Assembly (NCBI RefSeq): GCF_006345805.1
Contig: NC_043015.1
Location: 5,828,001-5,892,000, forward strand
DNA: 64,000 nucleotides
Direction: 5' to 3'
DNA from: Octopus sinensis
Lineage: Eukaryota
In this document: positions 40,007 through 64,000 of the stretch, in pieces
Numbering within the stretch: the first letter of the stretch is position 1
How the letters are laid out: the number at the start of each line of letters is the position of its first letter
Translations under genes and position numbers: made by a program
Notes under the pieces: generated by a model
What the model saw: the letters and a program-made list of their open reading frames with translations, nothing else
Told to the model about the DNA's origin: nothing
Database searches by the model: none

Positions 40007-40046
<40 letters not shown>

Positions 40047-40082
40047 AGAGAGAGAGAGAGAGAGAGAGATAGATAGATAGAT

Positions 40083-40146
<64 letters not shown>

Positions 40147-43000: not shown

Positions 43001-43192
43001 TTCTTTTACTTGTTTCGTTCATTGGACTGCAGCCATGCTGAATAACCACCTTTTAGACAAAGAAATTGACTCTAGGACTTATTCTTTTTAAGCCTGGTAC
43101 TTATACTATGGAACACTTTGCCAAACCACTAAGTTACGGGGACGTAGACACGCCAACATCAACTGCCCATTGATACACACACACAAACACAT

Positions 43193-43245
<53 letters not shown>

Positions 43246-43344
43246 ATATACACTACGGGCTTCTTTTCAGTTTCCGTCACCAAATCCACTCACAAAGCTT
43301 CGGTCAGCCCGAAACTATAGTAGAAGACAATTGCCCCAGATGTC
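43001..43344 (-). mobile_element. SINE family A, diverged and head-less
   Basis: ttcttttacttgtttcgttcattggactgcagccatgctg...cgggcttcttttcagtttccgtcaccaaatccactcaca. Confidence 0.82.
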
Positions 43345-43920
43345 AAGCTTGTATGTGTTATATGTGTACCAATCATATTCTGAACGTGTTAGATTTTAGT
43401 AAATATTTGTAGAATCACGTTACTTAGTCGAAAACTTTTCTTGGATGATTATGTCGACTTTAAGTCTATTTATTTTTGATTGAGGCAGTTTGTCATATTT
43501 ATTTATATATTGCAGTATTTTGCTCACTTATAGAATGGTCAATGAACTGAAGAACGGCAACCAATTTCAGAAATAATTATAAGACAACCAAGATACAAAA
43601 ATCGATTCACAGAGAAAATAAAAGGAAAACAGACTAAAGATTTATTAGAAAATAATATAAAATTGGCGGATGTCATTCGTAGTCAATGCTGTATTTAGAA
43701 AACATTTGTAATCAGCTAATAAAACAATTAACATTAGACAAAAGAACATGATTCAATGGTAGAAAACCTGCGCAAATAAAGCTGACAGTGCACTTGAAGA
43801 CTGCAGCTACGTGAAACTTGGGTCGCTAGAAGAAATTAGTTTTAAATAAAGATTTAAACAGTATCTCTTCCACTGACTCACAATGAAACATCTCTATGTA
43901 TCTTAATCGCTCTTTCTCTT

Positions 43921-43970
<50 letters not shown>

Positions 43971-43975
<5 letters not shown>

Positions 43976-44148
43976 GAATTTACAAAAAAATACAACAAAG
44001 GATGGGTGTGTGAGCAAGAAACATATGTATTAGTTTAACGCTCGGAGAGTGAGAAAGTCTTTTACGTTTCAAGCCTATGCTCTTCGACAGAAAGGAACAC
44101 AAAAATAAACAGCGAGAGAAAATAGGAAAAGGTTTAGTGGCTAACGAT
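43971..44148 (-). mobile_element. Repeat with a hammerhead-like fold (variant core CUGUCGA), probably Penelope-related
   Basis: Minus strand 44094-44059 reads CTTT-CTGTCGA-a-GAGC-atag-GCTT-GAAAC-GTA-AAAG. Homologous to 61981-62089 in the opposite orientation. Confidence 0.55.
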
Positions 44149-45342
44149 ATATGCACATTCGCTAGTTAGTGAGGACAGGAAACAAATCGTAGTCGACATA
44201 TTTCGTTTGGCCTTATTGGCACATAAAACGCGTCTATCTCAACCACACTTTGAGGGCGGAGTGAAATTCAAAATAGCTTCTAGGCCTATATTGGTCAGCT
44301 CACCTAACGTGGTATTAATGTTGTCGAAGAAATCCGAGCAATTTCGTTACTTTTAGACTTTTAAAAGCTTCTTTCTAAAACCTATGGATCTTAAAAATCT
44401 TCGCTCCCTACATTGTCACGGTCAGTTAATCTTGTCTACTTTGACAATATCTTTTCAAACATTACATGCTACAATATTTGCAACCATAAGTCTACAAGCC
44501 TAAAACCAAACTCCCAACATGTAACTGTCAGAATTTCCCTTTACGAGGATCATGTATCTCAAATGTTGTAGTCTATACAGCTTCCCTTACACAATTCAAT
44601 AGCATTATAAAACATTACACGTGCAAGACATCTAATCACATGGTCCCGTGACGAAGCAGGTTTAATCAATTTTCAAAACTTTACTTTAGCACACACATGG
44701 TGTCTTGCATGGGTGAAACTAACAAAAAAAGAATAGAAGTCTATATGTATTAGCTCTCAACGACTGTTGGTAATATATTCAGTTTTAATATATACTTAAA
44801 TATAGTATCGATATTTTCCAATCTTCAATTAAGTCGTGAAGTATGCCAAGAATCTTTTATTAATATTCCATCTATCGTTCAATTCCTTCCTTCATTCTTA
44901 ATATCATCCTCTTGTAGCATCTCTCTTTCATTGCATTCTCGCTCAATAATTATATCATCCTTTCAAAACCAATGTTCAACTTCCCTTGTTTTCTAAACTA
45001 CGGAAACATTTTATACATAGATGTTTCATCTTATTATTCAAAGCATTCTTTCCATTTATTATTTATTTATTAATATTTTTTTCTGTATGATCTTCGATAT
45101 GTTTCTCATAAAGTAAATTTATATAAATACTGTACGATAAATTTTGTAACCTTTGTAATTTCCATATGAACTCTGAACCGACTCAAAGAAAATTCGCAAC
45201 ACATATTGGTGTATGAAGCCCTTCACTCTCTTTCGCACTCTACGCGTATATAAACACGTATGTTTATATATGTGTATATAAGTATGTATATATATATATA
45301 TACATGTATTGATATCTATCTATCTATCTATCTATCTATATA

Positions 45343-45380
<38 letters not shown>

Positions 45381-45396
45381 TATATATATATTGATA

Positions 45397-45429
<33 letters not shown>

Positions 45430-45479
45430 ATATCTATATATATATATATATATATATCTATATATATATATATATATAA

Positions 45480-45530
<51 letters not shown>

Positions 45531-45531
45531 G

Positions 45532-45585
<54 letters not shown>

Positions 45586-46712
45586 CACTTTCTCTCCCCA
45601 TTAATTTATCTATCTATCTATTTATCTGTGTGTATGTATATATGTATAATAGACAGGGATATAGGCCGAGATACAGAATAATAGAACAACTACATCTAGA
45701 CACGTACACACTTGCGCGCGAAGATGCGTATTCATATAATTTTATATATGTATGTTTAAGACCACTGCTCCCTGTTACCGTGCTGCTCACACAAATACAC
45801 ACTCTGTTACACACACACTTGCGCGAACGCACATGCTCACACATACACACAGATACTTCATTCTCTTACACTCTCCTGTCTTAGAAAGGAATTTTTCTTT
45901 TCCCATTCCCTTCCGGTCATCTGAAAATGTAACTGCATGTGAATCGTTGTCGATTTTGTTTTCTTCCATGTTCCTTTAATCCTAGACTTTCCTCTGAGTC
46001 CTGTTTCTGAAGAATAGCTCTGCTCGAAACGTAAAAACACCTTTCTTTCCTTGCCTGAGTGTCTGTTAATACTTTGCAAGTACCACATCCTCGCGTTGTT
46101 GTTTTTTCCTTGCATATTTATTCGTCTTTTTTTAGATCAATTATATATATATATATATACAGATATTCACAGGGAGGGAGAGAGACAAAAAGAGAGACAT
46201 AAATAGATACTATGCTCATATATGGAAACTATAATGTACTTCTATGTATTTCATACACATAAATGTATCAAGAAAGCTGTTTGTCTTGGAAGATATTGTA
46301 CAAACTACACTGGCAGATGACTTGCTCAATGTGATACGCTTGAATCCTTCGATATAAACTGTTAACTATTTGAAGCAGTAAAGTCACTGTAGCAGAACTA
46401 TATCCTACCACTAATGTGTTGAAGTACTTTTATGCTTTGAAATATTTCTAAGAGAAATTCTAATTGATTATTCTACAATAAACCATCAGGAACAAAGGAA
46501 TATATAGTAAAAGTGTAAGAAAAACATATAACGGAAGCTCATAAAATGGTAAACGCATGTATGAAGGATACATATGCGCATACTCGAGTATGAAAAACTA
46601 CAGGAAAGAACGCACATGCACGATGATGTTTATGCATATGAACAAACAACGTCAGTTAATATAATACACACTCACACACATACATAAATATATACCTACG
46701 TACCGTATGTAT

Positions 46713-46749
<37 letters not shown>

Positions 46750-46757
<8 letters not shown>

Positions 46758-46900
46758 GTATGGATAGGTATGTATATGTATGCATAAATATATATCTCCA
46801 TATATCCATATATATATATATATATATATGTTTATATAATGTATGGATAAATATATATATATGTATGCATAAATATATATCTCCATATATCCATATATAT
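46750..46900. repeat. Tandem duplication of an about 75-bp AT-rich unit
   Basis: ataatgtatggata...gtatgcataaatatatatctccatatatccata occurs twice. Confidence 0.7.
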
Positions 46901-46975
46901 ATATATACATACATATATATATGTGTGTATGTATTGATATATAAGTATGAATGTATGTATGTATAGATATGTTTG

Positions 46976-47021
<46 letters not shown>

Positions 47022-47399
47022 AGAAGTAGTAGAAGAAAGAAATGGAGTGAAAGGGAAGGGAGAGTGTAGGTGCGCATGTTTATTGGTAGCTTTATTCGTA
47101 ATTTTGTATTTACTTTCACAATCAATTTACTAAATATAAACTTATGCATATTCATTTATACATACATAAAATTGTATTTGCATATATCCACATACACATG
47201 CACACATATATATGCGCATATATTTATATGTGTGTTTGTGTGTAAGTGTGTCAAAGGTAAGTGTGACCCCTAGCGCGTATGCTAGGGTACCAAGCGTATA
47301 CATATACTAGATGAAGAGTATACATATACTAGATGAATCGTATTTATATCAACACATTAATTGTCTACCTACCAGCCTACCTACATACCTACCTACTTA

Positions 47400-47464
47400 C
47401 TTACATACCTACGTACCTATTTACACTCACACGTATATGCGTGTATATATATTATTATGTATAT

Positions 47465-47508
<44 letters not shown>

Positions 47509-47770
47509 TATATATATACTCGCATTCATATTTATTTACGTATATATATATATATTTATATATATACACACACACCGACATATATATATATACTTTCCTA
47601 CCTACCTATTTACACTCACACATATATGCGTGTATATATATCATTATGTATATATGTATATATATTATGTATATTTATATATATATATATATACATATAC
47701 TCGCATACATATTTATTTACGTATATATATTATATATATATATTCACATAGACATATAGACATATATATA
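47400..47770. repeat. Tandem duplication of an about 190-bp microsatellite-rich unit
   Basis: tacctatttacactcacac...tgcgtgtatatata...actcgcat(t/a)catatttatttacgtata occurs twice. Confidence 0.75.
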
Positions 47771-47846
47771 TATTTGTATTTACATAAATATGTGCACACA
47801 CGTTGATATATGCATATATATGCGTATATGTATATATATATTATAT

Positions 47847-47905
<59 letters not shown>

Positions 47906-48569
47906 TTGAGACTACTTATATGCAGGCTGCTCTTCATTGGACTAGAAAATACGATATTGTGTTTACAGAGAAATGACAATTGCATCGTGTTATACAGATC
48001 AAAGAAATGGATGCATTCTTGCGTGCGAGCATCAAGTAATCTCTATTGATAACGGATGAGTTGCTTCATCTTTATTTTTCTTGTGGATTATAAAGTATTT
48101 ATCACTTGTGTCTTTGAAACCAACCCCACCCTCCATTCGACGAAAAAATAATCTTAAGCATAACATAATTATGAACATAAAGAAACAGAATCAAACGAGA
48201 GTAAAATTCGGCAACTATAAAAGCAATGACCAAACTATTGGACAATGATAGATAGATAGATAGGTAGATAGATAAATACATACTTCCATACATACAAATT
48301 TTTTTTTGTATCGTAGAATATTTGTGTGTGTCCGTGTGTATTGCTGTTTGTCTGTGCCTTAGTGTGTGTACATTATGTGTGACTTTTCTTTTGCTACACA
48401 CTCGCACATACTTCCATACATAAATGCACTCTAGTACTCCTGCGTATATCTACAGACCTTTGTATAAATGTAATTTTGTTTATGCTTGTTTTTTAATCTC
48501 TTGAAATAGTATCTAAATATGGCTTATGTATGCTTCTATGCATATATTTCTTAAACCGCTTTTTAAACC

Positions 48570-48639
48570 TTTCTATCTATCTATCTGCCTTTCTATCTAT
48601 CTATCTATCTATCTTTCTATCTATCTATCTATCTATCTG

Positions 48640-48724
<85 letters not shown>

Positions 48725-48780
48725 ATATCTATCTCTCTATATCTCTCTCTATCTATCTATCTATCTATCTATCAATCTCT
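48570..48780. repeat. (CTAT)n tetranucleotide microsatellite (representative; others at 3780-3890 and 40070-40145)
   Basis: Directly visible. Confidence 0.95.
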
Positions 48781-48794
48781 ATACATACATATAT

Positions 48795-48843
<49 letters not shown>

Positions 48844-49486
48844 CTCCCAAGCTAGATCCTCGTAGGCAGTTGATTTTGGAATTTACTCTAATTCATTATA
48901 ACAATCTGTAATATGACATTTCCAATTGTCTCTCAATAATAGTTTCCAAATATGGAAACGGTATTTCCATACTACATTCTATGAATGCTTTTCAATAAAC
49001 GTGTCTTGGCTTATTTATGCTGAGTTCAATAATCCTGCTTAATCATACCCGCCGAGTAAGAAAATGCATGAATGATCACAGGTAGCCAATTTAAATGGGG
49101 GCCACAATTCCATGTTAAAATAATTGGGTATAGTGTGTCCATACGGAATCCTGTAGGATTTTTAACATACTGTGTGACAAGTGTCATTTTCCAAAGATTA
49201 GAGAGACAGAGATATAAGAAAACTTGGGTAGAATAAAACTTGTTTTGAGCCCCTTGGGTAGGGTATTACTGCAATTCAATCGTCATTTTTCTCAGTTGGT
49301 ATTTCAAGCGGATTGTCCCTGAAAATTACTTAAACGGTGGTTGCAACTATTGAATATTCACTTCGCAAATTAAATGTAATAATATCTAACTCAGTAGATC
49401 TGAAATTCATTGATAGAAGTCCCTTGATATTCATGTATGTATATGTACTTCTGTGTATGTTTCGTTGTGAGTGGATGCTATAATTC

Positions 49487-49874
49487 GACGGTGTGGCTGC
49501 GTGGCAAGAAGCTTGCTTCCCATCCTCATATTTCCAGTGCCAGTCTAATTGCGTGGCCCCTTGGGCAAGTGTCTTCTACTATGGCCCCGGCCAACGAACG
49601 CCTTCTGTGTGGGTTTGGCAGATAGAAATTGAATGGAGTCCGTTGTGTGTGTGTTTGTGTGTGCCTGTGTGTTTGTGTCTTTTTCCCACGAACGTTTGAC
49701 AACTGGTGTCGGTATGCTTATCTCTCAGCTACATAGCGGTTCGGCAAAAGAAACCGACAAAATAAATACAAGGCTAAATAAACAAAAGTACTGGGTTCGT
49801 TCATTCGACTAAAAATTCTTCGAGACGGCGCCTCTTCATTGCTTGCAGTTTTAATGACTGAAACATGTAAAAGA
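49487..49874 (+). mobile_element. SINE family A, old subfamily
   Basis: ggtgtggctgcgtggcaagaagcttgcttccca...ccttgggcaagtgtcttctact...gcggttcggcaaaagaaaccga...aatgactgaaacatgtaaaaga. Confidence 0.8.
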
Positions 49875-51125
49875 TCAATGAAGGAACATGTAAACGAAAG
49901 GAAAGTCGATGAAAATGCTTTCGAAGTACAAATATCATGTAATGTTTCTTTCATCCAAGTTTTACTTTCATAAATGCAATGAAACGATAGTTGATCCATT
50001 GGTATCTATAGGCAATGAATTTTTAGCTCACAAATTATGATACGAAATATAAAAGATATAAGAGTTTAAGTTAAAAGCTTGTTGCAGTCTTCAGTACTAC
50101 GAGGACTATTTCTTACTCTGTGTCTTCAGCGTATCTTAGAGAAATTAAAAATATGAATATTATAATTTAAATGAAGATAGTTGAAGGACAGTTTTTCGTC
50201 AAATTCCAACAATGCAGTTTAATCAGGTTTAAGATCAAAACCTCTCCATGCTTGACTACCTCATCTGTTTGTTTATTTTGTTTAGGTGTAGTATATTTAG
50301 GTATGTACTATCCATCGAGTCTTCCTTTATGAAAGACAGGAGGGTTATATAAAAGTGCGTATTTATCTACTAGTTTTATTGAGTCGAGTGGTAGAAGGTT
50401 AAATTTTTTAGTCTTGCTGTGTTACGAAAAAGATTTTTGATTAAATCTCCTGTGTCCTCTTACTAAGATATCGTTTTTGAATACCAGATTCGATGTGAAG
50501 TAACCAATAAATATTCATTTATTGAGAATGAGAAATGCATTCGAACGCTGAATCCCCATGGAACATTCCCAATTACTCTACAATAGTTAGAGTTCACGTT
50601 TCTGTTATCTCTATTTATATCTGATGCGCAGTTAACACTGATGTTGCTGGTCGGAAAACAATTTAGAAGTAATCTATACAAGCTGAAGCAGAATATATCC
50701 CTATAAATATACCAATTGTTTGTAATAATACCATTTAATCACTTTAGTGCTCCGAACACAAAAATATCTAAAACTGCTATCCACACTCGGTAAATTTTCA
50801 CAGTATAAAGCCTTTGTAAGAAATCCCATTAACACATATTTTCTCACTTTTCTCTATATAACAAGTTTATGCTAATATAATGTTAAATCTCATTGCCAAC
50901 TTCATCAATCATTCTGAAAACTCGGCGTACGCCTATCTTATATTTCTACCAATATTAATAATGCTATAAAGCATACATTATCTCTTCTCTCTAGCATCGG
51001 TGCCTCATAAAACTTGTCTGCAGCTTGTGTATTTTGGCAGAGAATACCATATATATATATATATATGTGTGTGTGTATGTATGTATGCGCGCGTATATAC
51101 ATATATATATATATAGGCATACATA

Positions 51126-51226
<101 letters not shown>

Positions 51227-51276
51227 CGCACACACAATCCCTCTCTGTCACTGTGTGTGTAGAACACACGCATATT

Positions 51277-51339
<63 letters not shown>

Positions 51340-51737
51340 ATGTGTGTGTGTGTGTGTGTGTATGAATATCGAACAAATACGTACAATGTAGATAAAATAT
51401 AATAATATTCTCACAGTGGATTTTACACTAAAATATATTGTACGTTCATTAAGCTGACAGTTATTTCCATGATAGAAAACTACAGGGAGATATAGTGTAT
51501 GGTCAAGTCTTTTAAAATCTGGTTGCTGTGAGTAAGCTTGACTTAAATTTGCAATGCTTGCTTGCACAGTGCAGATTGTGAGCCATGGTAAATGGCATTG
51601 ATAAAATGAAGAGTGCTGGTACTTTGCGATTCCTGTATAAGTATTCTGTAACCAATTTGGTGTTCAAGTGTAGTTGTAGATGCATCCTAATCGAGGAGTA
51701 AGTTCATTTTAGCTATGACTATTTTGTTGCTTTAGAT

Positions 51738-51999
51738 TGGCATATTTGGCATAGATTGGCATATCTCGGTCATATTATGCGGAGAAAATCTCTGGAGAAG
51801 GACATCATGCTCGGAATGGTCAGTGGCAAGAGAGGAAGAGGCCGACCAAGAACTCGCTGGCTTGACACCATCAAGAGAGATACCGGAATGGACATAGCCA
51901 GTCTGAAAGAAGCGGCCCATGATAGAACTGACTGGAGGACACTGATCCAACGAGTGACCGAGAATCGACTTCGACTGAGCGGTTAGAAGAAGAAGAATA
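51738..51999 (+). mobile_element. 5'-truncated RTE/BovB-clade LINE with a 14-bp TSD
   Basis: ORF ...YLGHIMRRKSLEKDIMLGMVSGKRGRGRPRTRWLDTIKRDTG...DRTDWR.LI..VTENRLRLSG* is the characteristic RTE/BovB ORF C-terminus. An (AAG)n tail directly follows the stop. ttgttgctttagat occurs at 51724-51737 and 52000-52013. Confidence 0.92.
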
Positions 52000-52849
52000 T
52001 TGTTGCTTTAGATGTCCAATGTTCTCCATGAACTTACATATCGTTATAACGTCTATGAGGTTGTTCGTTCATCCACTGAGGAGTATTCTTGTTGTTGAGT
52101 ACCTGCTAGTATTGTCAGTACTTTTTCTGTAGTATTTGCTTGTACGAAAGACAAAGCTCTATGTTTCAGCAGTTGCATGCCGACTCCAATTCCTCCTTAA
52201 ATATTCCCCATAAATTTCCTGCAAACGTACCCACGTACTTCTAATAGAAATGAATTTTTGTAATGATCATTTTTAGAATTATTGAGTAGAAAAATCGTAA
52301 AAAACCGGTACAGGGAATACCTATACCTGAGGTGTTTCATTGCGCCTGCTTATGATCCTTGTTTAAAATTTGTGTGTGTAACATTCCAGCATACAGAACT
52401 TGGAAAGGAAAGATATCGTGCACATGTTAGAAATTGCCATTAATAATTTCAATAGAGAAAATTATTTATAACATGCAAAGAATTTCACTAATTCTTAGGG
52501 AACCGAACAGTTAATTATAAATCCCTCCAGTTGTTGACTTGTAATTGATTTTATTCCAAACAAGCAAGAATATTTTCGATACTCTAACAGATCAGATTGT
52601 AGACGTTGATTTTGACAATGCATCACCTTAATCTGTAGATGACAAAATTCCATCAATTTTGGGAAAGTGTTAGTCTTTTAAAATCCTCTCTGTTACTTGA
52701 TTTGTACATATCTAACAGACAACAGCGAAGTTGCCTTCTCCATGATGTGAATTCAAGAAACATAGATCGAGAACAAATACCAATTCTGCAAATCCGCGTC
52801 TCTCGAAATATAGGTTTCAAATTTTGGTATAAGACTAGCAGATTTGGTT

Positions 52850-53031
52850 GTTTGGCTAAGGCCACACATTCAGACATCGATCCCAGTGTTCAACTGTTAC
52901 TTATTCTATTGAACGGAAAGTATGAAAGGCAAAGTCGACCTCGGAGGAATCTGAAGTCAGAACGTAAAGACGAACGAAATGCTGGTAAGCTTTCCGTCTG
53001 GCGTGCTAAGGATTCTGCCAAGCTGGCCCCT
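52850..53031 (-). mobile_element. SINE family B, diverged
   Basis: gaaaggcaaagtcgacctcggaggaatctgaagtcagaacgtaaagacgaacgaaatgc...ggcgtgctaaggattctgccaagct. Confidence 0.8.
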
Positions 53032-53382
53032 TAGCGTCTCTTGAAATAATAGTAATTATTTCTAATCTAATTTATGTACATCACTAGCAATTTCGAAGAA
53101 GCTGAGCTGATACTTATCTAAAAGAGTAAAATGTAAAGTTGACGGCATAGGTACTTGAATTCAAAACGTAAAGTACCGGAACATATTACGGAAGGATACT
53201 TTGTCGAAGCTCTAACCATTCTGCCAATACAACAACTCAATTTCTAGCAGCGGAAAAACACTATGCATTGTGATAGAAATAACAAATGCAAAATGGAAAT
53301 ACCAAATACGAAGTAGAAATACCAAATACAAAATTCAGCCAGTTTCTCAACAATATGTAGAGACAATACTTAAGTGTAGTAT

Positions 53383-53597
53383 TAATTGGTTTCAAAGTTT
53401 GGCACTAGCTCAGCAATCTCAGGGAAGGGTAACTCGGTTAAATGAACCCTGGTACTCAACTGGTACTTACTTTATCGAATCCGAAAGGGTGAAAGGCAAA
53501 ATCGACTTCAGCGGCATTTGAGCTCAGAACATAAAAACTTGACGAAATGCTCTGCACATTTCGCCCGGCGTGCCAACGAATCTGCCAGCTCGCTGCT
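53383..53597 (-). mobile_element. SINE family B
   Basis: actcaactggtacttactttatcgaatccgaaagggtgaaaggcaaaatcgac...atttcgcccggcgtgccaacgaatctgccagctcgc. Confidence 0.82.
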
Positions 53598-54548
53598 TTA
53601 AGGAAGTATTAATTAATAATTAATAATTAAAGTAAATTATTTCTCTAATATATTCTGGCACTACTAAGAACGAAGTTTTTATACCTCCTGAAGCACTGTA
53701 GGTTTCTAGGGGTAGGATCAATCATAACTAGGTCAACTGGCTTCCGAAAGAAACTATTTCACTAACGTTTGCTAGAACTACTGAGATCGAATATTCAATA
53801 ACTTCCGATTTCTGTGCCATTTTTACATTGGTGTTTAAACCATTAAATTAACCACACGAAAGAATTGATCTATAATCAATACCATTGAAACCATTACTAA
53901 CCCATTTTATTTTTCCCGGCTATATTAGCCAATATATATTTTCTTAAACGTGATAATATTAGCTTCACTTTACATCAAGCAGAAGGAATGACCAGGAATT
54001 GTTGCTAGAGATCTTTTACTCTTTAATAAACGTATATTTTCCTAAACGTACATCCAAAAATAACTTGATTTGCTGTTTCTTTACGATCTCCTCGTTGGTT
54101 ACAATTATCTGAGATGTCAGTTTGAATATTTCTCATCATCTGATGCTAGCAGGAGAATGTCATTTCTCATATTTTCAACGTAATATTCGCAGTTGTAGAT
54201 TTTTGTAAACAATCATTGCTAGTCGTTCTACATTGATGAAATATTGAGCGTGTAAATCACAACCATTTCCTACGAATCATGCTTTCCCGTGTATTTTCAA
54301 TACTACCTCTGCATTATGATTCCGTTTAATAATTCGAGAATACGAACTATGTTGGAAAGAGAAAATTATCAAGATATTTTATCTAGTTCTGATTCATATA
54401 TACTATATTAAATCTATTAGTTTTGTCATATAATTGTGTGAAACAATATTATTTAAAGCATGACATAATTGCTCTTCCTCCTCCTCCTCCTCCCCCTCCT
54501 CCTCCTCATCATCATCGCTATCGCCGTTAAAATTATGACTTTTATCGC

Positions 54549-54747
54549 TATTCTTTTATTCTTTTACTTGTTTCAGTCATTTGATAGCAGCCATGCTATT
54601 GCACCACCTTTAGTCGAACTAATCGACCCTAGGACTTATTCTTTGTAAACCTAGTCCTTATTCTATTGCGGAGCCGTTAAGTTACGAGGACGTAAACACA
54701 CCAACATCGGTTGTCAAGCGATTGTGGGGGACAAACAGGGGCACACA

Positions 54748-54806
<59 letters not shown>

Positions 54807-54969
54807 ATACGATGGGCTTGTTTCAGTCTCCGTCTACCAAATTGATTCACTAGTTTTTGGTCGGTTCGAGGCTATAGTAAACACTTGCCTAAGTTGCCTC
54901 ACAGTGGGACTGTACTCGGAAACATATGGTTGGGAAGCAAGCTTCTTACCACTCACCCACGCCTGCGTC
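54549..54969 (-). mobile_element. SINE family A
   Basis: ttcttttattcttttacttgtttcagtcatttga...ggttgggaagcaagcttcttaccactcacccacgcctgcg. Confidence 0.85.
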
Positions 54970-55201
54970 TATGTTTAAGATATTTTGTTATCACTGGTTC
55001 CAAATTTTGACAGAAGCCCAGCACTTTTGGCGGTTGTGGGTAAGCCGATTACATTGCCTCCAAGGCTAATTATTCTGCCAACTCGCCGCTCTTCAAAACG
55101 CGAAAGTAGTTTTGAAATATTGTTCTCTTCAGAAAAGGCTGAGTTTTGCTAATAAGTAACAACAAAAAACATCAACAAGTCAATAACAAGAAGTAAATAT
55201 A

Positions 55202-55764
55202 TAGGGTTGTCCGGAAAGTTCGTGGCGATTTTTAAAGGAAAGAAAAAGGTTAATAAATACATGCCATTGCATTTTTAATCAACCAAATATGAATCATTTT
55301 GTTGCACAATGCGTCTCCATCTTTCCTTTAACCTAAAAATACTCTCTTCCCAGAATTGAGATGGTTTCATGGCAAAAAATTCAACAAAGTATCCTTTTAC
55401 GTCATCCAAACAATTGAAATTTTTACCATTAAGACTATTCTGCAGAGACCTGAATAAGCGGAAATCCGAAGGAGCAATATTTGGTGAATATGGAAGGTGG
55501 GGTAACATCCCAGCCGAGCTGCAGCAACTTTTTTTCTGGTTCCCAAAGCATCAAATGCCGAAAATAAACTTTCTTATCTTCCATTTTAAAGGGTTACAGA
55601 ATTAATACAGGTTATAGGAACATAAACCTTTTCCCACGAAGGTAGCTTAAACTGTGCTCTAAATGGAAGTGTAGTCAAATCCTATTTTATAGACTCAACC
55701 ATGTTCTAAAATAAGTCGAAAGGTAAGCTACTATAAATCGGCAATAACTTTCTGGACAACTCAA
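55202..55764 (-). mobile_element. Internally deleted mariner (Tc1/mariner) transposon, 563 bp, with TIRs and TA target duplication
   Basis: TIRs TAGGGTTGTCCGGAAAGTTCGTGGCGATTT and TTGAGTTGTCCAGAAAGTTATTGCCGATTT; TA at 55200-55201 and 55765-55766. ATG at 55584 begins MEDKKVYFRHLMLWE, fused to the frameshifted C-terminus ...LPHLPYSPNIAPSDFRLFRSLQNSLNG...RWRRIVQQNDSYLVD* (YSPDLAPSD-type motif). Confidence 0.92.
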
Positions 55765-55999
55765 TATTATTGCGACACTTATTAAATCGACAAAATGTTT
55801 AGCAGTATTTCGTACTTCTTTAAGTTTTGAGCCCAAATCCTGCCAGGTTTGAGAATGCCATTCATCCTTTCCTGATCTGTGAAGTCGGATTGGACAGTTG
55901 AGGTTAATATAAGCGACTCCTCGCTCCCAAGACATTTGATGACTTGTGCCTATTGTAGAATGGATTATTTTGATTCATCTTATTAATGAGGCAAATAAC

Positions 56000-56180
56000 A
56001 CACTTATCAGCATTTCTTTTTATGTTTTCATTTGAAATACCACCGAGGTCAACTCTGCATTTTCTTCTCCCGGAAAACGATAACATAAAGAACTGTTCAA
56101 GTACTGGGGTCATTGTAATGGAATAACCAACCAACCCCCACTAAAATTGCTGTCCTTGTACCAAAATTAGAAAAAATATT
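56000..56180 (+). mobile_element. Highly diverged SINE family B copy
   Basis: tttgaaataccaccgaggtcaactctgc...gtactggggtcattgtaat...aaaattgctgtccttgtaccaaaattagaaa. Confidence 0.55.
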
Positions 56181-58627
56181 TGTTACAATAGTCTCATTTT
56201 TCCACATTGATTTTTGTGATTGCTTTTCAAGTAATTCATGCTTGTCAACTATTACTAATTCATGTTATATTTATTTCTAAATATATTTTGCCTAAGAATA
56301 TTGTTTTTATTTTTGGTTTTATATGTTTTCTTTTTCTATGTGGGATTATGAAATATTCATTTAGTATATGATCTGTTAACCGTCAAACAGTATTGTTAAA
56401 CCCAACAATTATATTTATATATCAAATTATGAGATACAATAATGTCTCCCTTGAGAGTATATATGACGAACTATTATGTTAACCAAACATAGTAAAAGTC
56501 ACTTCCTTTTTATTGTTTTTTGTGTGCTTCCAACGAATGAATTTGTCAGAAAAAAATTCCGAAAGATAAGTTATTTTCGCTGCGTAAAATGGATTAAACA
56601 ATTTACCAATAAATAAATAACTAAACAAATATATATATAAAATAAATTGTTTGAAAAAATTTCTTTTTCTATTTTGAACAACCAAATATTTTCAATGAAA
56701 TTTCGAATGTATTTAATGAATAGATGACAAATGATATAAAATTGTAAATGCTGATTTCTGATAGTATTTTAAGGCGTAAATTAATTACATTCGCGAATTA
56801 AAATTTATTTCTATGTCTAGAAAATGTAGCAATTAACAAACTCTGTCAGTAGTGAAAACATTTTAATTTGAGTTGGAAAATAAATATGATTTCATCGAAA
56901 AGAGATTAGGATAGATGTTACTGAATTCGAAAGAAGAGTCAGTAGGTAAGCTGAAGAGCTTTGCAGCAAAGTATAAAATTTGATGTAACATCTATGTGTA
57001 ACCATACATCTCTCGAGCCTTTAGAACACTACAATTAGCAGTGAAGAATAGGGAAATGATAACCGGTTTTATGCGTCTGGTGTTTGAATATTTGTGTTGC
57101 TTTATTTCCCTGGGAAGTCTACATGGTGATATGGTCAGTGATTCAAGTATTTTGTCTTATCGGAAAAGTTTTAACCGCTGTTAATCTGCAAAGGTTTCAT
57201 GAGTAAAAGTAACAGCAGAACTATAACGTTATTTACAAATGTAAATTTATGCTTTTGTACAATTCTGTATCAATAAACTAATGTTTGGAAAAGAAAGACT
57301 AATATGAGAACTGAATGGAAATATTGAAAAGTGAGCTTGCAACTATGACTGCTTCGTATACGTCATGCGGTGTACACCATAGAAGCCTCTTTGTCAGTGT
57401 GTTGTCATTGATCTCAAAGCAATTAATACTGTTGACAAATGTATTTGTCATTTATAGAACCGACACAACATGTAAATATGTGAGTATGATGTGTGTGATT
57501 GAGTATATATGTTGTCTATGAGTACAGTCTGCAATTTGCATATTGAAATTGCGTGAAACTTCAGTTGTACAAGTAGCTAGAGCGTAACAAATAACATCAA
57601 CTCCAGTTTCCGGTTGAAAAGTTTTTGTTTTACAATGCAGCTGTGTTTTTCCTTGTTTCCGTCCGCCGTCTCTTATGCAATTCCATCGATCATTGATGCT
57701 TAGATGTTAGAGAAAGCAACTTGTAAATAGTGTGTCGATAACATATTTCAAACTTCCATACAAATTGATTATAAAGCGGCAGTGGTGCGTTAATGTGTTA
57801 CCCATAGACACGTTTCTGCAGATGTGCCGGAACAAAAGGGAAGCGAATAGCAGATAAGTTTAATTTGAAATGTCAAATTAATGAAAAGGGAGTAATCAGA
57901 CGACTGATACTTCGCTGTATGTATTTAGAATGACATTACCAAATTACATCCGATGTTAAAATGTTTGTCGTATAATATACCTTCAGGGAAATGCATATAG
58001 TCAATTTATCTTACCAGTGCAAACAAAGACTACATCGTATTAATATAGAGGTAGATATTTAATATAAATACTTAATGATAAAATTAACTAAGCGTAATGT
58101 TTGCAAATGAGAGTGATAATCAGCTGAAACGAAAGAATGAGGAGACCCGGTAACAATATTCCAAAGGAGAATCAGACACTTAAACTTTAGAGATTATTCA
58201 ATGCTTTCTGCTAATATAAATACAAAAAGTGTTAATACAAAAGGATAATTAATTTCCAGAATTATTCAACATATCGCACGAATTGCTAAATTTATAATAA
58301 ATAGTGAAGGAGTCAGAGAATTGTCTAGGCATATGAAAGTGATTGAAATAGTTATAGCTAGAAGAAAACATGCGCATGTATATGCTGTTTGTGTATAGGT
58401 TTGTGTGCGTGCGTATAAATATATATTTATAGACGCAAATTCAACATATGTATGTGTACATGTACAGATACATAATTATATACGTATAAATACTTATTTC
58501 TCATGATTACGTACGTATAGATACTTATATGCGCGTGTGTGTGTGTGTCTATGTATGCATGTATGCACCTATGTGTATCCATACGCGTTTATGTGCGTAT
58601 GTATAGTTTCGTGAAACAAAAGTTTTA

Positions 58628-58670
58628 TCTCGGGACTCAAGTTTCATGCATGTGCACTCTTCAGGCGAGA
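58628..58670 (-). ncRNA. Type I hammerhead motif on the neuroligin sense strand (intronic)
   Basis: TCTCGC-CTGAAGA-GTGCA-ca-TGCAT-GAAAC-TTGA-GTC-CCGAGA. All core positions present, GUC triplet, stem III 2 bp plus a 4-nt loop, stem II closed by G.U, stem I 5 bp after a C/C mismatch. Confidence 0.65.
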
Positions 58671-59246
58671 AACTGATGATCGCATCGCCCTGAGACTGGA
58701 GTTCACTGTAAGATCTTTAACACATTTGCTTTTGGGTGTTTAACACATATGAATCATTAAGAATCAAATATAAAATTGTTTTAGCATGTAAACAGCTATC
58801 AAATTAGGTGTTTAAGACATAACGAAGTGATGTATGGAGTATTTTGCAGGAGCGCCTTCGTGACTAATAGAATCTTGACATATTTTAAGGTATTCTCAAA
58901 TATTTTTTGTTATATTCTGTATTCCCAAATATTTATGCATGAATGTGTAATTTAAACTTTCCGTTTTGAAAGTTTGGGAATGCAAGGATTGATCGAATAA
59001 TTTTCAGTACCTAATATAATATATAAACTTTGCTGTATGCATTAAGGGCAAATTCTATTCGCTTGTAAATGCAAATTCTAAACAATCCATACACAAACAC
59101 ACCTACACACTCAAATATAAAATTATATATATCAGAAAATCTACAGACTTTATATATATATAGTTTATGTATGTGTGTGCATATATGTCCGCGTTATCTA
59201 CATGTTTATACATACCTGGACACACATAATATATATATATATATAT

Positions 59247-59321
<75 letters not shown>

Positions 59322-59806
59322 GTACACACCCACATAATGAAAGGAATAGTTATCGAAATTATATCTTCACAACTTATTACACCAATCCATCAAATTGGCG
59401 GCGAATTAAAACAAGGCGAATTTATATATACAAACACTGATACATATTTATACACGTAAGAGCACCTATCGTACTTAGTGAAGTTTACATTCACAATATA
59501 CGCATACGAACTATCGAACAAGGATATTGGGAATTCGTTTTATTGCTTAGGATATCTAATGGTAATATCTCGGATCCTATCATATACATAGGAAAGGAAT
59601 ATCACTACGATGTGTACAGATAATTGAGATAAAATGTTTAATACAAACCTTACCAACACCGCAAGGAAATACAAGTGTGTCACGCCTATACATTTATGTT
59701 CTCTACTAAATTTTTCTTTCATATAAAGGAGATAATAAATCAGTCAAGACAAGAATACGATAGTTTCATTATAACATTTCTCAATGATACTGCAAACGTA
59801 CACATT

Positions 59807-59849
<43 letters not shown>

Positions 59850-59886
59850 GCATACATACACACACATACATGGCATTATAAATTTA

Positions 59887-60296
59887 CGCAGGCGTGGCAA
59901 GAAGCTTGCATCCCAACCACTGCATACCAACTTCGATAATTGACTTCAGCTGTAGCTACGGGCCGTCCAAAGCCTTGTGAGTAGATGTGGTTGATGGAAA
60001 CTGAAAGGAAGCCTACCATATATATATACAACTTATAAAGAAGGGCAAGAGAAACAATTCTAATGCCAAATATGCCGAAATATACACTTATTCGTCAATA
60101 ACCATATAATTTATCACTATATGGTTATTATGGATAAACTATATGGTTATTAACGAATAAGTCTATATTTCGGCATATTTGGCATTAGAATCTTTTCTTT
60201 TGTCAATGTTTATAAGTTGTTTATGAAATTTAACCTTTAAAGGTATTTTTTTAATATGTTGGCCATTGATAAAGATTTTTTCGAAAATTTTAATCC

Positions 60297-60331
<35 letters not shown>

Positions 60332-60511
60332 TATATTTGTGTGTCTTTCTGCCCTCCACCGTTTGACCACCGGTGTTAGTGCGTTTACGCTCCTCGGCAA
60401 GAGTACCAGACTTTAAAAGATGTGCTGGGGTCGATTCACAGGACAAAAAATATTCAAGGTGGTGCTCCACAATGGCCGCGATCTACGGGCTGAAACAAGT
60501 AAAATATAAAA
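59887..60511 (+). mobile_element. Diverged SINE family A split by an insertion in its central (TA)n
   Basis: 5' half 59887-60017 (ggcgtggcaagaagcttgc...gatggaaactgaaaggaagcc); 3' half about 60335-60511 (...ggtgctccacaatggccgcg...tgaaacaagtaaaa). Confidence 0.7.
60028..60220. mobile_element. MITE-like foldback (about 85-bp imperfect arms)
   Basis: acaacttataaa...ttctaatgccaaatatgccgaaatata...aataaccatata is mirrored by tatatggttatt...tatatttcggcatatttggcattagaa...tttataagttgt. Confidence 0.75.
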
Positions 60512-60746
60512 GGCTCACACACACACACATGCATACACACATACACATATAATGTTGCTTGCGAGATCTATCGAGAGTTCTACTGTTAATGTTAACATGG
60601 CAATCAGTACAATCTGGTGCATGGGTGGTTCGTCTTTCAATAAATGGGCGCTAGTCTTGCCTGCTGAGAAGGGTTGCTAGAAACCCAGCAGGACTAAAAA
60701 GAAGAACTGTTAAAAAGCAGGATTACCTTTATGCATGTTCAACGTA

Positions 60747-61046
60747 TGGAGGCACAATGGCCCAGTGGTTAGGGCAGCGGACTCGCTGTCGTAGGATCGC
60801 GGTTTCGATTCTCAGACCGGGTGTTGTGTTTATTGAGAGAAAACAACTAAAAGCTCCACGACGCTACGGCAGGGGGTGGTGATCCGTGCTGTAGTCTATC
60901 ACCACTCTTTCTCCCTCTCTTTCTTCTGTTGGCCTGCTCGCTTAGCCAGCGGGGTGGCGTCATTCAAAGGCTAAAACAATGCGAACGCATTGTGACTATC
61001 GATGTGTAACAACGCCTGATGATCTGGTCGGTCACGTGATCACGTG
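60747..61046 (+). mobile_element. Full-length tRNA(Arg)-like SINE, family D, with a 12-bp TSD
   Basis: A box TGGCCCAGTGG, anticodon-loop-like ACTCGC (TCG), B-box-like GGTTTCGATTC. atgttcaacgta occurs at 60735-60746 and 61047-61058. Confidence 0.9.
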
Positions 61047-61980
61047 ATGTTCAACGTACACTACCGGGAGTGATGCAGCTGTCACCTTTTGTTAAAGCAA
61101 GTCTCATGGAGAAGGCCACTCTGATATAAAACCAGATATTAAGGAATGGCATGGGATATTTTGGCGATATTTTGGTTGCGCCTGAAATCATGGCAGTCAG
61201 AAATACCTGACTCTTCGACCCATATCAGTATTGACTGTCTTGTCCTAGCTTGTCAGGAGGGTGGGAAGGCTGTGTCAGGTAGTGTGCAAGTTTTATTTGA
61301 CTTAAAGTTTTGGTCATCAACTGCGGAACGACTTTCCATTGACCAGTGGAGTAGAAGTAGAGCGCCACAGGGTCAAAACCGGATGAAGCAGAACTCATCA
61401 TTATAGTTGGCATTTGCATGGGCAATGGTCAGTGGTGTTCTGTCTGAGTCACAAATAGGCATAAATGATACATACATACATACGTGTGTGTATGCGTGTA
61501 TGTGTGTGTACGTGTGTGTGTGTGTCTAAGTATTTGGACTAAAGGGTATAAGACAATTAGCGTGCTGAGTGAAGCACGTTCGCAGCTTGGGCTACCTAGT
61601 GTCTTCCATGGCTGGGGTACAGAACCGCTGGACCTACGTTAAGAATTCCACATTGCTAATGGAAGTAATAATAATTGATGAAAGAAACGGAAGATAAATT
61701 TAGCACAGAGTCTTTATTCAGTACAACGATCGTCTCGACGCATCCTGCAGTTGTCCGTTATGAGTAGGAATTTGTGCATCTAATTGTATTGCATCAATCT
61801 ATGCAGTTTGTGTCACATCAGGTACACGCATAAAGAAGTGAATGCCCCGCTAGATATACTGAGATTTCCTTAGCATGTTGTTCGTCATTGCTGTATTTTG
61901 GTGATGACCGACCATAGTTGTCCGTTGGTATACAACATAGAATTATTATTATTACTTCTCACTCTCTCTTTATATATATA

Positions 61981-62187
<207 letters not shown>

Positions 62188-63869
62188 TTTATATATTATA
62201 TATATTTATATTTATATATGTATGTATGTATTAGCACAGAATCTCACATACTTAGATGTATACAAATATAAGAGCCTATAGAGTCGCACAACGTTTAACA
62301 AGGTCGTTTTACTTAATTTTTTTCAATTGTTTATATATAGTGTATATTCACTTTAGTTTAGTTAATTATTCACATTCGGGAGTAATCATTATTATTTTTT
62401 GTCAACTTCCTTATCTTTTTCACCACTGATTTTTTTTTTAATGTTGCTAATTTTGCATTCATTATTGTATTTATTATTTTACTGTTAAAATTGAAAAAAA
62501 GACTGTCTAAAAAACTGTTCAGATACATCTATCGCCCATCTACCGCCTCTCTTGTCATCAGTACATATATTTAAATCTTTCCTTGCAACTTAGGGGCTGT
62601 ACTACATACATTTAAAAGCACTCAGATTAAATTAAATGAGAAAGAATCATAGAATAGTATAGACATTCGTGTAATCGGTGTGTTAACATGTAAGAGGAAG
62701 TGAAAAAATATATAGTTTCAGTGGTGTAACCAAACAAATGAAGAACGAACAAGACATGACTTTTACTCCATACTGGATAAAGTTGAGTAAATTAGATTTT
62801 TCGAAACAGGTGTTACCGTTAGAGCAATTCCGGTAGGTTTTTATTCATTATCCTTCAAAAGGAGATGTCGTAGGGTGAAGTGCTGTTACGTAATTTCTTT
62901 TTAACCTTATACCTAAGTTTCCTTTCAACGCTTAAACGTTTTACATGATGAATTTTAAATTTTATTTTCTCAGTGTATATAATGCTGATTTTTCCGACAT
63001 ATTTTGTAACCAGCATTACAGACTAATTGAAGAATGGTGCCTTTAACTGTACCAAAATGCATTTATGCGAAACATGGAATAGCAATATAGAGTTTATTGC
63101 TCATGTAATATCATTAAAGAAACACATTTCCAGCAGTAGAGACTATTTTAACAATAGTTTTTATGACTATTTAGTGAATAGATAATTCAGTAAGCTTGGT
63201 TAACTATTTCACTAAAGCAACACATGCCATGAAAAACATGTGCTTTTAAAACAATAATCGTGTTTATTCTATGAGGTAAGATTGCACACAAACTGAACGC
63301 ATATATTATTCAAGAGAATTCCGTTGTGAGGCTAAATCATCGACTGAGGCGGCATGTGGTAATTGTATTTAATTAAAATAGACACCATCTACTAATTGAA
63401 AACTTTGGCACTCAGAGAACAATTTTCCGTAAATGTCTTTATATTTAGCATTAGTTATGTTCCTGATTTTAAAATCTCACAGAAAGCACAGATGACTCGC
63501 ACTTTTCCATCTGCATACAATTCTATGACGCATAAAACATTTATATTTCTGAACATATATTCACCTGTGTATTGCGAATTGCAATTTATTTTATGTGGCA
63601 AGGGTCATTAATAATAAATGGAATACGCAGCGCATATGTGTGTATGTATATGTATGTGTGTGTATGTATGTGTATGTGTGTGTATGTATGTATATTCACA
63701 CATATATATTTCTACGAGCGCTCTCACACAAATAATTAAATATTTGTTGATTAGTGATTAAAAATTTTCTTCCTCTTCTACATTTGAACAAAATTCGAAT
63801 ACAAATCATGTTTATAGTTTACAACATCTTTTAAAAATAAAATATCTATTAGTTAAATTGTCTACTTAC

Positions 63870-64000
63870 CCAGATTTTGCAAAATTCGTCCAGTAACGCA
63901 TCACTGCTTCACTTAGCATTCGTTCTGACTTCGAATACGATGACGTGCTAAAAGGTTGTATGCCGTCAACTAAGGGAGCCCCGAAAATATACGGAAGCTC
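63870..64000 (-). CDS. NLGN: Neuroligin, internal coding exon (end of cholinesterase-like domain); runs off the window edge
   Basis: Reverse complement translates openly as ELPYIFGAPLVDGIQPFSTSSYSKSERMLSEAVMRYWTNFAKS-GG, matching the neuroligin/cholinesterase motif E(V/L)PY(V/I)FG...YWTNFAK(T/S)G. The donor is GG|gtaagt at 63870/63869 (phase 2). Not in the supplied ORF track. Confidence 0.95.

What the first reader, a model, noticed from the sequence alone, without database searches (positions are those of the whole stretch)
58620..58675. Near-canonical solo hammerhead on the sense strand of the neuroligin 25-kb intron
Seen in sequence: CUGAAGA, GAAAC and GUC in the correct order with three stems. 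Unlike the minimal family, stem III has a real 4-nt loop, so it could fold as a monomer. Stem I can extend past a 3-nt UAA bulge (AGTT with AACT), the geometry that permits loop II/stem I tertiary contacts in fast type I hammerheads. Deviations are a G.U at 10.1 and a C/C mismatch at the base of stem I. It lies about 5.2 kb after the donor, is necessarily transcribed with the gene, and is not part of a palindrome or any repeat I recognise. Intronic ribozymes in neural genes are established in vertebrates (for example the HDV-like CPEB3 ribozyme and conserved amniote intronic hammerheads); a functional cephalopod analogue is inference.
Basis: partly seen in the sequence, partly recalled or inferred. 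Interest (0 to 1): 0.72.

Follow-up and report, generated by a model that had tools for sequence, protein, structure and literature searches.

The report
Lone, flawed hammerhead-like motif in intron
A 56-base stretch inside a long intron of a neuroligin-like gene really does spell out a type I hammerhead ribozyme, but it is defective at key positions, scores below the family threshold, and is more likely a dead retroelement copy or a chance match than a working gene-regulating ribozyme.

Summary
On the minus (sense) strand, 58675..58620 carries CUGAAGA, GAAA, A15.1-U16.1 and GUC in type I order, with helix I (5 bp plus a C/C mispair), helix II (4 bp, starting G.U) and helix III (2 bp, UUGA loop). 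It lies 5,194 nt into a 25,050-nt intron of a neuroligin-like gene. It is the only such match in the window. Chance expectation is 3e-5 to 2e-3 per window, or roughly 1-90 per 2.5-Gb genome.

- Rfam Hammerhead_1 gives 19.1 bits against a gathering score of 34.
- The C1.1/C2.1 mispair is a published rejection criterion.
- The short helix III is the canonical metazoan type I form, which cleaves poorly as a monomer and normally needs a second copy. None is nearby.
- Predicted folding gives helix III a probability of 0.0, and in ≥100-nt context an upstream complementary arm takes over helix I.

Conservation and copy number could not be tested, because no related genome is reachable with these tools. 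The window also holds three copies of a minimal, Penelope-type hammerhead-like repeat.

Best reading: a decayed solo copy of a retroelement hammerhead (about 0.5). Chance is about 0.33. A host-functional intronic ribozyme is under 0.1.

The parts
58620..58675 (-). Complete hammerhead-like type I motif (56 nt). The Rfam Hammerhead_1 alignment covers 58670..58628.
58665..58674 (-). Helix I 5' strand: extension AGUU (58674-58671), UCUCG (58670-58666), then C2.1 (58665), which is mispaired with C1.1.
   Evidence: (NC mark on this pair)
58658..58664 (-). Core box C3-A9: CUGAAGA.
58646..58657 (-). Helix II: GUGC / ACAU loop / GCAU. Four pairs, the first being G10.1.U11.1.
   Evidence: pair probabilities 0.90-0.99 in isolation, about 0.1 in context
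58634..58645 (-). G12 A13 A14, then helix III (A15.1-U16.1, C15.2-G16.2, loop UUGA), then C17 at 58634, with predicted cleavage 3' of it. ACUUGAGU is self-complementary if two G.U pairs are allowed, so it could form the intermolecular helix III of a dimer.
   Evidence: the model aligns it as <<<<>>>>; helix III pair probability 0.0
58621..58633 (-). Helix I 3' strand: C1.1 (58633), CGAGA (58632-58628), UAA bulge (58627-58625), AACU (58624-58621).
58673..58702 (+). Upstream arm (in the transcript) of a weak inverted repeat with 58635-58664: 20 of 30 complementary, 8-nt spacer. It starts with CTGATGA on the + strand. It is the predicted folding competitor of the hammerhead.
38820..63869 (-). The 25,050-nt intron of the neuroligin-like gene that holds the motif (GT donor at 63869/63868, AG acceptor at 38821/38820).
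58394..58600 (.). Degenerate TG/TA microsatellite-like tract that directly follows the motif in the transcript. A second such tract lies at about 59090-59340, so the motif sits at the 3' end of a roughly 490-bp non-repetitive segment between two microsatellites.
   Evidence: sub-threshold mir-297-like hits are low-complexity artefacts

Best explanation
This is a solitary, mutated copy of the canonical metazoan type I hammerhead, the kind carried by non-LTR retrozymes and Penelope-like retroelements. It sits, by accident of insertion, in sense orientation in the neuroligin-like intron.

It is transcribed as part of the pre-mRNA. I judge that it cleaves little or not at all, for four reasons:
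- The pair next to the scissile bond (1.1-2.1) is a C/C mispair.
- Helix II opens with a G.U wobble.
- The two-pair helix III is of the type that needs a second copy to build an extended intermolecular helix III, and no second copy is nearby.
- An upstream complementary arm, transcribed first, can sequester the core and helix II.

It is then removed with the intron and has no host function.

Shown: the motif, its architecture, its rarity under shuffling, its sub-threshold score, the predicted misfolding, and the presence of other hammerhead-like repeats in the same window. Inferred: the retroelement origin and the lack of activity.
For: The architecture equals the published canonical metazoan type I: helix I 6 positions, helix II 4 bp, helix III 1-2 bp with a 2-4 nt loop (PMC4209133). 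[quoted passage not shown]

With that architecture fixed, chance gives only 3.4e-5 per window. All 13 core positions are intact, and Rfam Hammerhead_1 is the best family hit in the 86-nt search (19.1 bits, E=0.013).

The same 64-kb window holds three copies of a different repeat with a minimal hammerhead-like layout, CUGAUGA...GAAACGUU^GUGUU, whose helix III is reduced to the ACGU palindrome. Two of them form a 120-nt head-to-head palindrome. If these are minimal hammerheads, which I did not test, this genome carries hammerhead-bearing repeats.

The motif sits at the 3' end of a roughly 490-bp non-repetitive segment flanked by TA/TG microsatellites. These are a preferred target of some Penelope-like clades (PMC8557442). 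Local G+C is 0.43-0.45 against about 0.30 around it.
Against: No second copy, tandem unit or related flank exists anywhere in the window. No reverse-transcriptase or endonuclease reading frame is evident by eye among the ORFs of the upstream 4.4 kb, and none of the eight ORFs scanned from across the window matched Pfam.

The motif shares nothing beyond the core with the minimal repeat family. Genome-wide copy number, the decisive test, could not be run. The two metagenome scans found nothing, but a known multi-copy repeat of this window also found nothing, so that collection simply lacks this lineage.

I found no paper showing that cephalopods carry canonical type I families. The stems sit just at the minimum values of a descriptor, as chance hits do.
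Confidence: 0.5

Rival explanations
1. Chance match. The hammerhead consensus carries little information, and this is ordinary intronic sequence that happens to satisfy it. It has no evolutionary link to any ribozyme.
For: The Rfam score is 19.1 bits against a threshold of 34. Rescaled by hand to one family, the E-value corresponds to about 2e-3 per window and about 90 hits per 2.5-Gb genome. A descriptor at the candidate's stringency expects about 24 per genome. Every helix is at or near the minimum length, with a mispair and a wobble at the two core-adjacent pairs. The isolated 60-nt fold is unremarkable (z = -1.28). There is no repeat copy in the window. [quoted passage not shown]
Against: Within one window the match is rare: 0 of 400 and 5 of 8,000 shuffles, or 3.4e-5 when the published canonical helix lengths are required. 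The compact helix II (12 nt) and helix III (8 nt) match the canonical metazoan form, whereas the five shuffle hits had looser spacings. If the window's three minimal copies are genuine hammerheads (not tested), this genome holds hammerhead-bearing repeats, which raises the prior for a relic.
Confidence: 0.33
2. A host-retained, self-cleaving intronic ribozyme. It would be a cephalopod or mollusc counterpart of the amniote intronic type I hammerheads, cutting the nascent neuroligin-like pre-mRNA after C 58634 and so modulating its processing. It might be helped by protein chaperones or by pairing between two transcripts.
For: It is in sense orientation in a long intron of a neural adhesion gene. 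The core is fully intact. Helix I has a bulge five to six pairs from the core, and helix II has 4 bp, the layout that permits loop-loop contacts in type I ribozymes. There is precedent: type I hammerheads conserved in introns of amniote genes such as RECK are thought to be domesticated from retroelement ribozymes (PMC6155905).
Against: The C/C mispair lies next to the scissile bond, and there is a G.U at the most conserved helix II pair. Helix III has a predicted probability of 0.0, and a competing upstream hairpin is transcribed first. The score is sub-threshold. No partner copy is available for dimer formation. In vertebrates, non-LTR retrozymes, the tandem elements that carry type I hammerheads, are excluded from introns, which suggests selection against them in genes (bioRxiv 10.64898/2026.07.22.740005). 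There is no conservation evidence at all.
Confidence: 0.07
3. The relevant unit is the imperfect hairpin 58635-58702 (a small-RNA precursor or the inverted ends of a tiny element), and the hammerhead resemblance of one arm is incidental.
For: 20 of 30 positions are complementary with an 8-nt spacer. This hairpin is the MFE fold of the 81-nt and 181-nt contexts. The + strand fold has z = -2.2.
Against: The sense-strand fold has z = -0.31, with 68 of 200 shuffles as good. The alignment shuffle test gave 124/1000. There are no Rfam hairpin hits at this spot.
Confidence: 0.05

Closest known systems
Canonical metazoan type I hammerheads of non-LTR retrozymes and satellite-like repeats (Rfam RF00163: schistosome, newt/axolotl, cave cricket, mussel and coral repeats)
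   Same: Type I topology, an intact 13-nt core, helix I of six positions followed by an internal bulge, helix II of 4 bp with a small loop, and helix III of two pairs capped by a tetraloop that can pair with itself in a dimer. It is the best Rfam family hit.
   Different: It is solitary rather than in 170-450-bp tandem units. It has a C1.1/C2.1 mispair and a G10.1.U11.1 wobble. Loop II is 4 nt, where the model consensus has 6. It scores 19.1 bits against a gathering score of 34. No family copies are known.
Minimal hammerheads of Penelope-like elements (Cervera and de la Pena 2014)
   Same: Retroelement-borne, weak helix III, a tendency to head-to-head inverted arrangements, and association with microsatellite targets. 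Three hammerhead-like copies with this minimal layout lie in this same window (10610, 26172, 26333).
   Different: The candidate has a real, if tiny, helix III hairpin and a short 4-bp helix II, where minimal hammerheads have no helix III and a 7-8 bp helix II. It has no sequence similarity to the window's minimal family outside the core, and no Penelope-like reading frame or pseudo-LTR is nearby.
Amniote intronic hammerheads HH9 / HH10 (RECK, CTCL/C10orf118, DTNB introns)
   Same: A type I hammerhead in the sense strand of a long intron of a protein-coding gene, presumably derived from a retroelement.
   Different: Those are defined by deep conservation and demonstrated self-cleavage. Here neither is known, and the motif has defects next to the core.
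HDV-like CPEB3 intronic ribozyme
   Same: A self-cleaving-ribozyme motif in an intron of a neural gene. This is an analogy of setting only.
   Different: It is an unrelated fold and catalytic core, and it is conserved across mammals. There is no structural relationship to this motif.

Membership tests
Hammerhead ribozyme, type I (Rfam RF00163) | Invariant core: C3 U4 G5 A6 N7 G8 A9, G12 A13 A14, A15.1-U16.1, H17 | tested here: met
   CUGAAGA 58664-58658, GAAA 58645-58642, U 58635, C 58634.
Hammerhead ribozyme, type I (Rfam RF00163) | Three helices around the core with the open end in helix I | tested here: met
   Descriptor scans and the cmscan alignment over model positions 1-45 of 45.
Hammerhead ribozyme, type I (Rfam RF00163) | Score at or above the curated gathering threshold (34 bits) | tested here: not met
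   19.1 bits. It was not reported in the whole-window gathering search or the 501-nt E<=10 search, and appeared only in an 86-nt search.
Hammerhead ribozyme, type I (Rfam RF00163) | Standard pairing directly next to the core at 1.1-2.1 and 10.1-11.1 (rejection criterion of Perreault et al. 2011) | tested here: not met
   C1.1 (58633) / C2.1 (58665) is a mispair, flagged by cmscan. 10.1-11.1 is G.U, a wobble at what the paper calls the most conserved pair after 15.1-16.1.
Hammerhead ribozyme, type I (Rfam RF00163) | Loop II / helix I bulge tertiary contacts | not testable with these tools
   A UAA bulge and an ACAU loop are present at suitable distances. No covariation data or 3D modelling of RNA is available here.
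Hammerhead ribozyme, type I (Rfam RF00163) | Site-specific self-cleavage | not testable with these tools
   Only thermodynamic prediction is available. The hammerhead fold is -5.1 against an MFE of -12.2 kcal/mol, helix III probability is 0.0, and helix I is 0.0 in >=100-nt context.
Non-LTR retrozyme / Penelope-like element hammerhead | Occurs in tandem or inverted multi-copy units, or in pseudo-LTRs flanking an RT-endonuclease frame | tested here: not met
   Within the window there is no second copy or tandem unit, only a marginal 30-nt inverted arm. No RT/EN frame is evident upstream, and the eight ORFs scanned had no Pfam match. A solo relic is not excluded by this.
Non-LTR retrozyme / Penelope-like element hammerhead | Many related copies across the genome | not testable with these tools
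   No genome of this lineage is reachable. Metagenome scans gave 0 for the motif and 0 for a positive-control repeat. Exact ORF look-ups found nothing. The nearest protein relative is only 71% identical.
Domesticated intronic hammerhead (HH9/HH10-like) | Sense strand of an intron of a conserved gene | tested here: met
Domesticated intronic hammerhead (HH9/HH10-like) | Conservation at the orthologous position across species | not testable with these tools
   No orthologous intron sequence is available.

The most novel reading that the evidence does not exclude
A retroelement-derived type I hammerhead has been retained in a cephalopod or mollusc neuroligin-like intron and cuts the nascent transcript, perhaps conditionally, through chaperones or pairing of two transcripts via the self-complementary ACUUGAGU helix III. 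That would be an independent invertebrate parallel to the amniote intronic hammerheads.
Probability: 0.04. Interest if true: 0.7.

Novelty: new member of a known kind. Interest (0 to 1): 0.25.

Why it matters
If it were active and conserved, it would be the first intronic hammerhead tied to a synaptic adhesion gene outside vertebrates. That would suggest repeated domestication of retroelement ribozymes for pre-mRNA control. As the evidence stands, it matters mainly as a calibration case: an intact hammerhead core with three nominal helices is not enough. The pairs next to the core, the strength of helix III, the folding context, the family score and the copy number decide the matter. Here the four that could be tested count against activity, and copy number remains unknown.

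Tried and rejected
- Rfam at gathering thresholds over the whole window found nothing. Rfam at E<=10 over 501 nt gave only low-complexity miRNA-like hits on the neighbouring TG/TA tract, which I treat as artefacts.
- A first attempt at a Markov-chain null simulation timed out. I replaced it with dinucleotide shuffles.
- I searched JGI metagenome contigs for the motif (CTGAAGAGTGCNNNNGCATGAAACNNNNGTC) and got 0 hits. A positive control with the window's multi-copy minimal repeat also gave 0, so the collection lacks this lineage and the negative result says nothing.
- Exact look-ups of two ORFs next to the motif in public assemblies found nothing on record.
- I considered searching translated spurious ORFs in the 5.8-billion-protein database to find paralogous copies. 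I dropped this because the closest relative of the neuroligin-like exon is only 71% identical, so neutral DNA would not be recognisable as 20-45-aa peptides.
- I tested whether the + strand CTGATGA (58673) marks an inverted, decayed second hammerhead. The arm identity is 20/30, but the alignment is not significant and the tails do not align. There is no GAAA within reach. Rejected as evidence.
- I looked by eye for Penelope-like RT/EN frames among the ORFs upstream of the motif and scanned eight ORFs from across the window against Pfam. Neither found anything.
- A paper giving quantitative data on 1.1-2.1 mismatches was not found in the library. The EMBO Reports paper on intronic hammerheads is not held.
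Full report
What is there. The minus strand of 58675..58620 reads C-AGUU-UCUCG-C-CUGAAGA-GUGC-ACAU-GCAU-GAA-A-C-UUGA-G-U-C-C-CGAGA-UAA-AACU-U. In hammerhead numbering:
- C3-A9 is 58664-58658.
- Helix II is 58657-58646: G10.1.U11.1, U-A, G-C, C-G, with loop ACAU.
- G12-A14 is 58645-58643.
- Helix III is A15.1 (58642)-U16.1 (58635) and C15.2-G16.2, with loop UUGA.
- C17 is 58634.
- Helix I is C1.1 (58633) opposite C2.1 (58665), which are unpaired, followed by five pairs (58632-58628 with 58666-58670), a UAA bulge and four more pairs.

Gene context. The 320-aa ORF at 35184..34222 (minus) has mollusc relatives with a carboxylesterase-family ectodomain. A full-length member of the best cluster (P0067, 893 aa) matches Pfam COesterase at 4e-145. 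The ORF also has what looks, from the translation, like a hydrophobic membrane-spanning segment, and it ends in TIV. I read that from the sequence; it was not tested. tblastn of P0001 places exons at 63901..63869, 38818..38702 and 35199..34225. The splice sites are GT at 63869/63868 and AG at 38821/38820, with a Gly codon split GG|A. The intron is therefore 25,050 nt, and the motif starts 5,194 nt after the donor on the sense strand. 'Neuroligin-like' is justified. I did not verify 'cephalopod': the closest protein in the database is only 71% identical and comes from an unnamed Logan transcriptome, SRR27666087.

Is it more than chance? It is the only hit of a type I descriptor in the window on either strand. 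I made three estimates.
(a) A descriptor set at the candidate's own stringency gave 5 hits in 8,000 dinucleotide-preserving shuffles. That is 6e-4 per window, or about 24 per 2.5-Gb genome.
(b) A descriptor fixed to the architecture published for canonical metazoan type I hammerheads expects 3.4e-5 per window, about 1.3 per 2.5 Gb. It required helix II of at least 4 bp in 11-14 nt, helix III of 6-8 nt in all, and helix I with five of six pairs.
(c) The Rfam covariance model is the only estimate not tuned to the candidate. It gives 19.1 bits and E=0.013 for 86 nt, two strands and 4,227 families. I rescaled this by hand to one family, which gives about 2e-3 per window and about 90 per 2.5 Gb.
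So the match is surprising in one window, but such matches are expected somewhere in a genome-wide scan. The size of the scan is unknown to me.

Quality as a hammerhead. Rfam found nothing at gathering thresholds in the window and no hammerhead at E<=10 in 501 nt. Only an 86-nt search returned Hammerhead_1, at 19.1 bits against a gathering score of 34, with the innermost helix I pair flagged as non-standard. Perreault et al. [quoted passage not shown] The candidate fails at 1.1-2.1 and has a wobble at 10.1-11.1.

Helix III and the monomer claim. The literature says the opposite for exactly this geometry. [quoted passage not shown] The candidate is therefore not unlike the known families: it has the canonical metazoan type I layout. 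Its ACUUGAGU segment is even self-complementary if two G.U pairs are allowed, and the Rfam model aligns it as a loop-less <<<<>>>> helix, which is the dimer form. But the motif is solitary. There is no second copy within the window.

Folding. In isolation (56-60 nt) helices I and II are predicted with probability 0.7-0.99. Helix III gets 0.0. The hammerhead secondary structure is worth -5.1 kcal/mol against an MFE of -12.2, and the fold is not better than shuffles (z = -1.28). With 100-300 nt of context, helix I falls to 0.0 and helix II to about 0.1. The cause is that 58673-58702, which is upstream in the transcript and so made first, pairs with the core, helix II and helix III segment 58635-58664. 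That inverted repeat (20 of 30 complementary, 8-nt spacer, with CTGATGA on the + strand arm) is marginal as a feature: about 0.2% of shuffled positions reach 19/30, the sense-strand z is -0.31, the + strand z is -2.2, and the alignment shuffle gave 124/1000. It still matters as a competitor. Nearest-neighbour predictions do not model the hammerhead's tertiary core, so this evidence is suggestive and not decisive.

Surroundings. The motif sits at the 3' end of a roughly 490-bp non-repetitive segment (about 58600-59090) bounded by TG/TA microsatellite-like tracts. Local G+C is 0.43-0.45 against about 0.30 around it. No RT/endonuclease frame is evident upstream, and none of eight ORFs scanned from across the window matched Pfam.

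Elsewhere in the window there are three copies (83% mean column identity over 199 columns) of a repeat carrying ...ACAC-CUGAUGA-(about 21 nt)-GAAACGUU^GUGUU... They lie at + 26333, - 26172 (where GAAA has mutated to CAAA) and - 10610. Two of them form a 120-nt, 89% complementary head-to-head palindrome. Helix III there is reduced to the ACGU palindrome, which is the 'minimal' hammerhead layout described for Penelope-like elements. If these are hammerheads, which I did not test, the genome carries hammerhead-bearing repeats, but the candidate shares nothing with this family outside the core.

Comparative tests. None was possible. Metagenome scans returned 0 for the motif and 0 for the window's own multi-copy repeat, so that collection lacks this lineage. 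Exact look-ups of neighbouring ORFs returned nothing. The closest relative of the coding exon is 71% identical, too far for intron alignment. A literature search found no description of hammerheads in cephalopod genes. One paper notes that Penelope-like Naiad elements exist in Octopus and squid as old remnants and lack canonical hammerheads (PMC8557442).

Weighing. Chance gives 3e-5 to 2e-3 per window. Retroelement hammerheads reach thousands to more than 100,000 copies in some animal genomes: about 5,000 in a mussel and 126,247 in axolotl. The window's three minimal copies, if genuine, would add to that prior. Published experience is that hits with core-adjacent mispairs are mostly mutated repeat copies. 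On that basis I put a decayed solo retroelement hammerhead at about 0.5 and pure chance at about 0.33. An incidental hairpin gets about 0.05 and a host-functional ribozyme about 0.07.

If the ribozyme were active, established knowledge says it would leave a 2',3'-cyclic phosphate on the upstream fragment and a 5'-OH on the downstream fragment. The effect on the mRNA would depend on how fast cleavage is relative to splicing. In vertebrates, non-LTR retrozymes are depleted from introns, which suggests that such insertions are usually selected against rather than co-opted.

Verdict. The motif is hammerhead-like with the canonical metazoan type I layout, but it fails two membership tests (the family threshold and core-adjacent pairing). 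It is probably inactive as a lone copy. Interest is low to moderate until copy number, conservation or cleavage is measured.

Noticed in passing
window 26127-26378 (CTGATGA boxes at - 26172 and + 26333) and about 10463-10653 (- 10610): Three copies of a repeat (83% mean column identity) carrying a minimal, Penelope-type hammerhead-like motif: ACAC-CUGAUGA-(about 21 nt)-GAAACGUU^GUGUU, with helix III reduced to the ACGU palindrome. The 26172 copy has GAAA mutated to CAAA. The two copies at 26 kb form a 120-nt, 89% complementary head-to-head palindrome with a 12-nt spacer. Helix II pairing is poor, and CUGAU can pair with AUCAG inside the unit, so activity is doubtful. Rfam reports only spurious miRNA-like hairpin hits here.
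   Followed up: partly
window 60024-60224: A 92-nt inverted repeat, 88% complementary, with 17 nt between the arms. It could be a foldback or MITE-like element in the same intron. Not characterised.
   Followed up: no
window 55275-55508 (-): A 77-aa ORF (…LPYSPNIAPSDFRLFRSLQNSLNGKNF…) that reads to me like the C-terminal part of a mariner/Tc1-type transposase. Pfam gave no hit at E<=0.01, so this rests on my own reading only.
   Followed up: partly
window 51756-51986 (+), 6864-7289 (+), 52639-53034 (+): Short ORFs with basic motifs such as …RGRGRPRTRWLDTIKRDTG… and repeated …RPRRNLNSER(S/N)GRRNT…, which suggest decayed retrotransposon or SINE-like copies scattered through the introns. There were no Pfam hits.
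   Followed up: partly
window 58400-58600: Sub-threshold Rfam hits to mir-297, mir-466, mir-1277 and similar families (best 35.6 bits against a gathering score of 90) fall on a degenerate TG/TA microsatellite directly 3' of the motif in the transcript. They look like low-complexity artefacts.
   Followed up: yes
whole window: Very dense TA/TG/CA microsatellites (the many 'YIYIYI…' and 'CVCVCV…' ORFs) and 32% G+C. The nearest database relative of the neuroligin-like exon is only 71% identical and has no taxon name, so the source species appears to be absent from the protein collection.
   Followed up: partly
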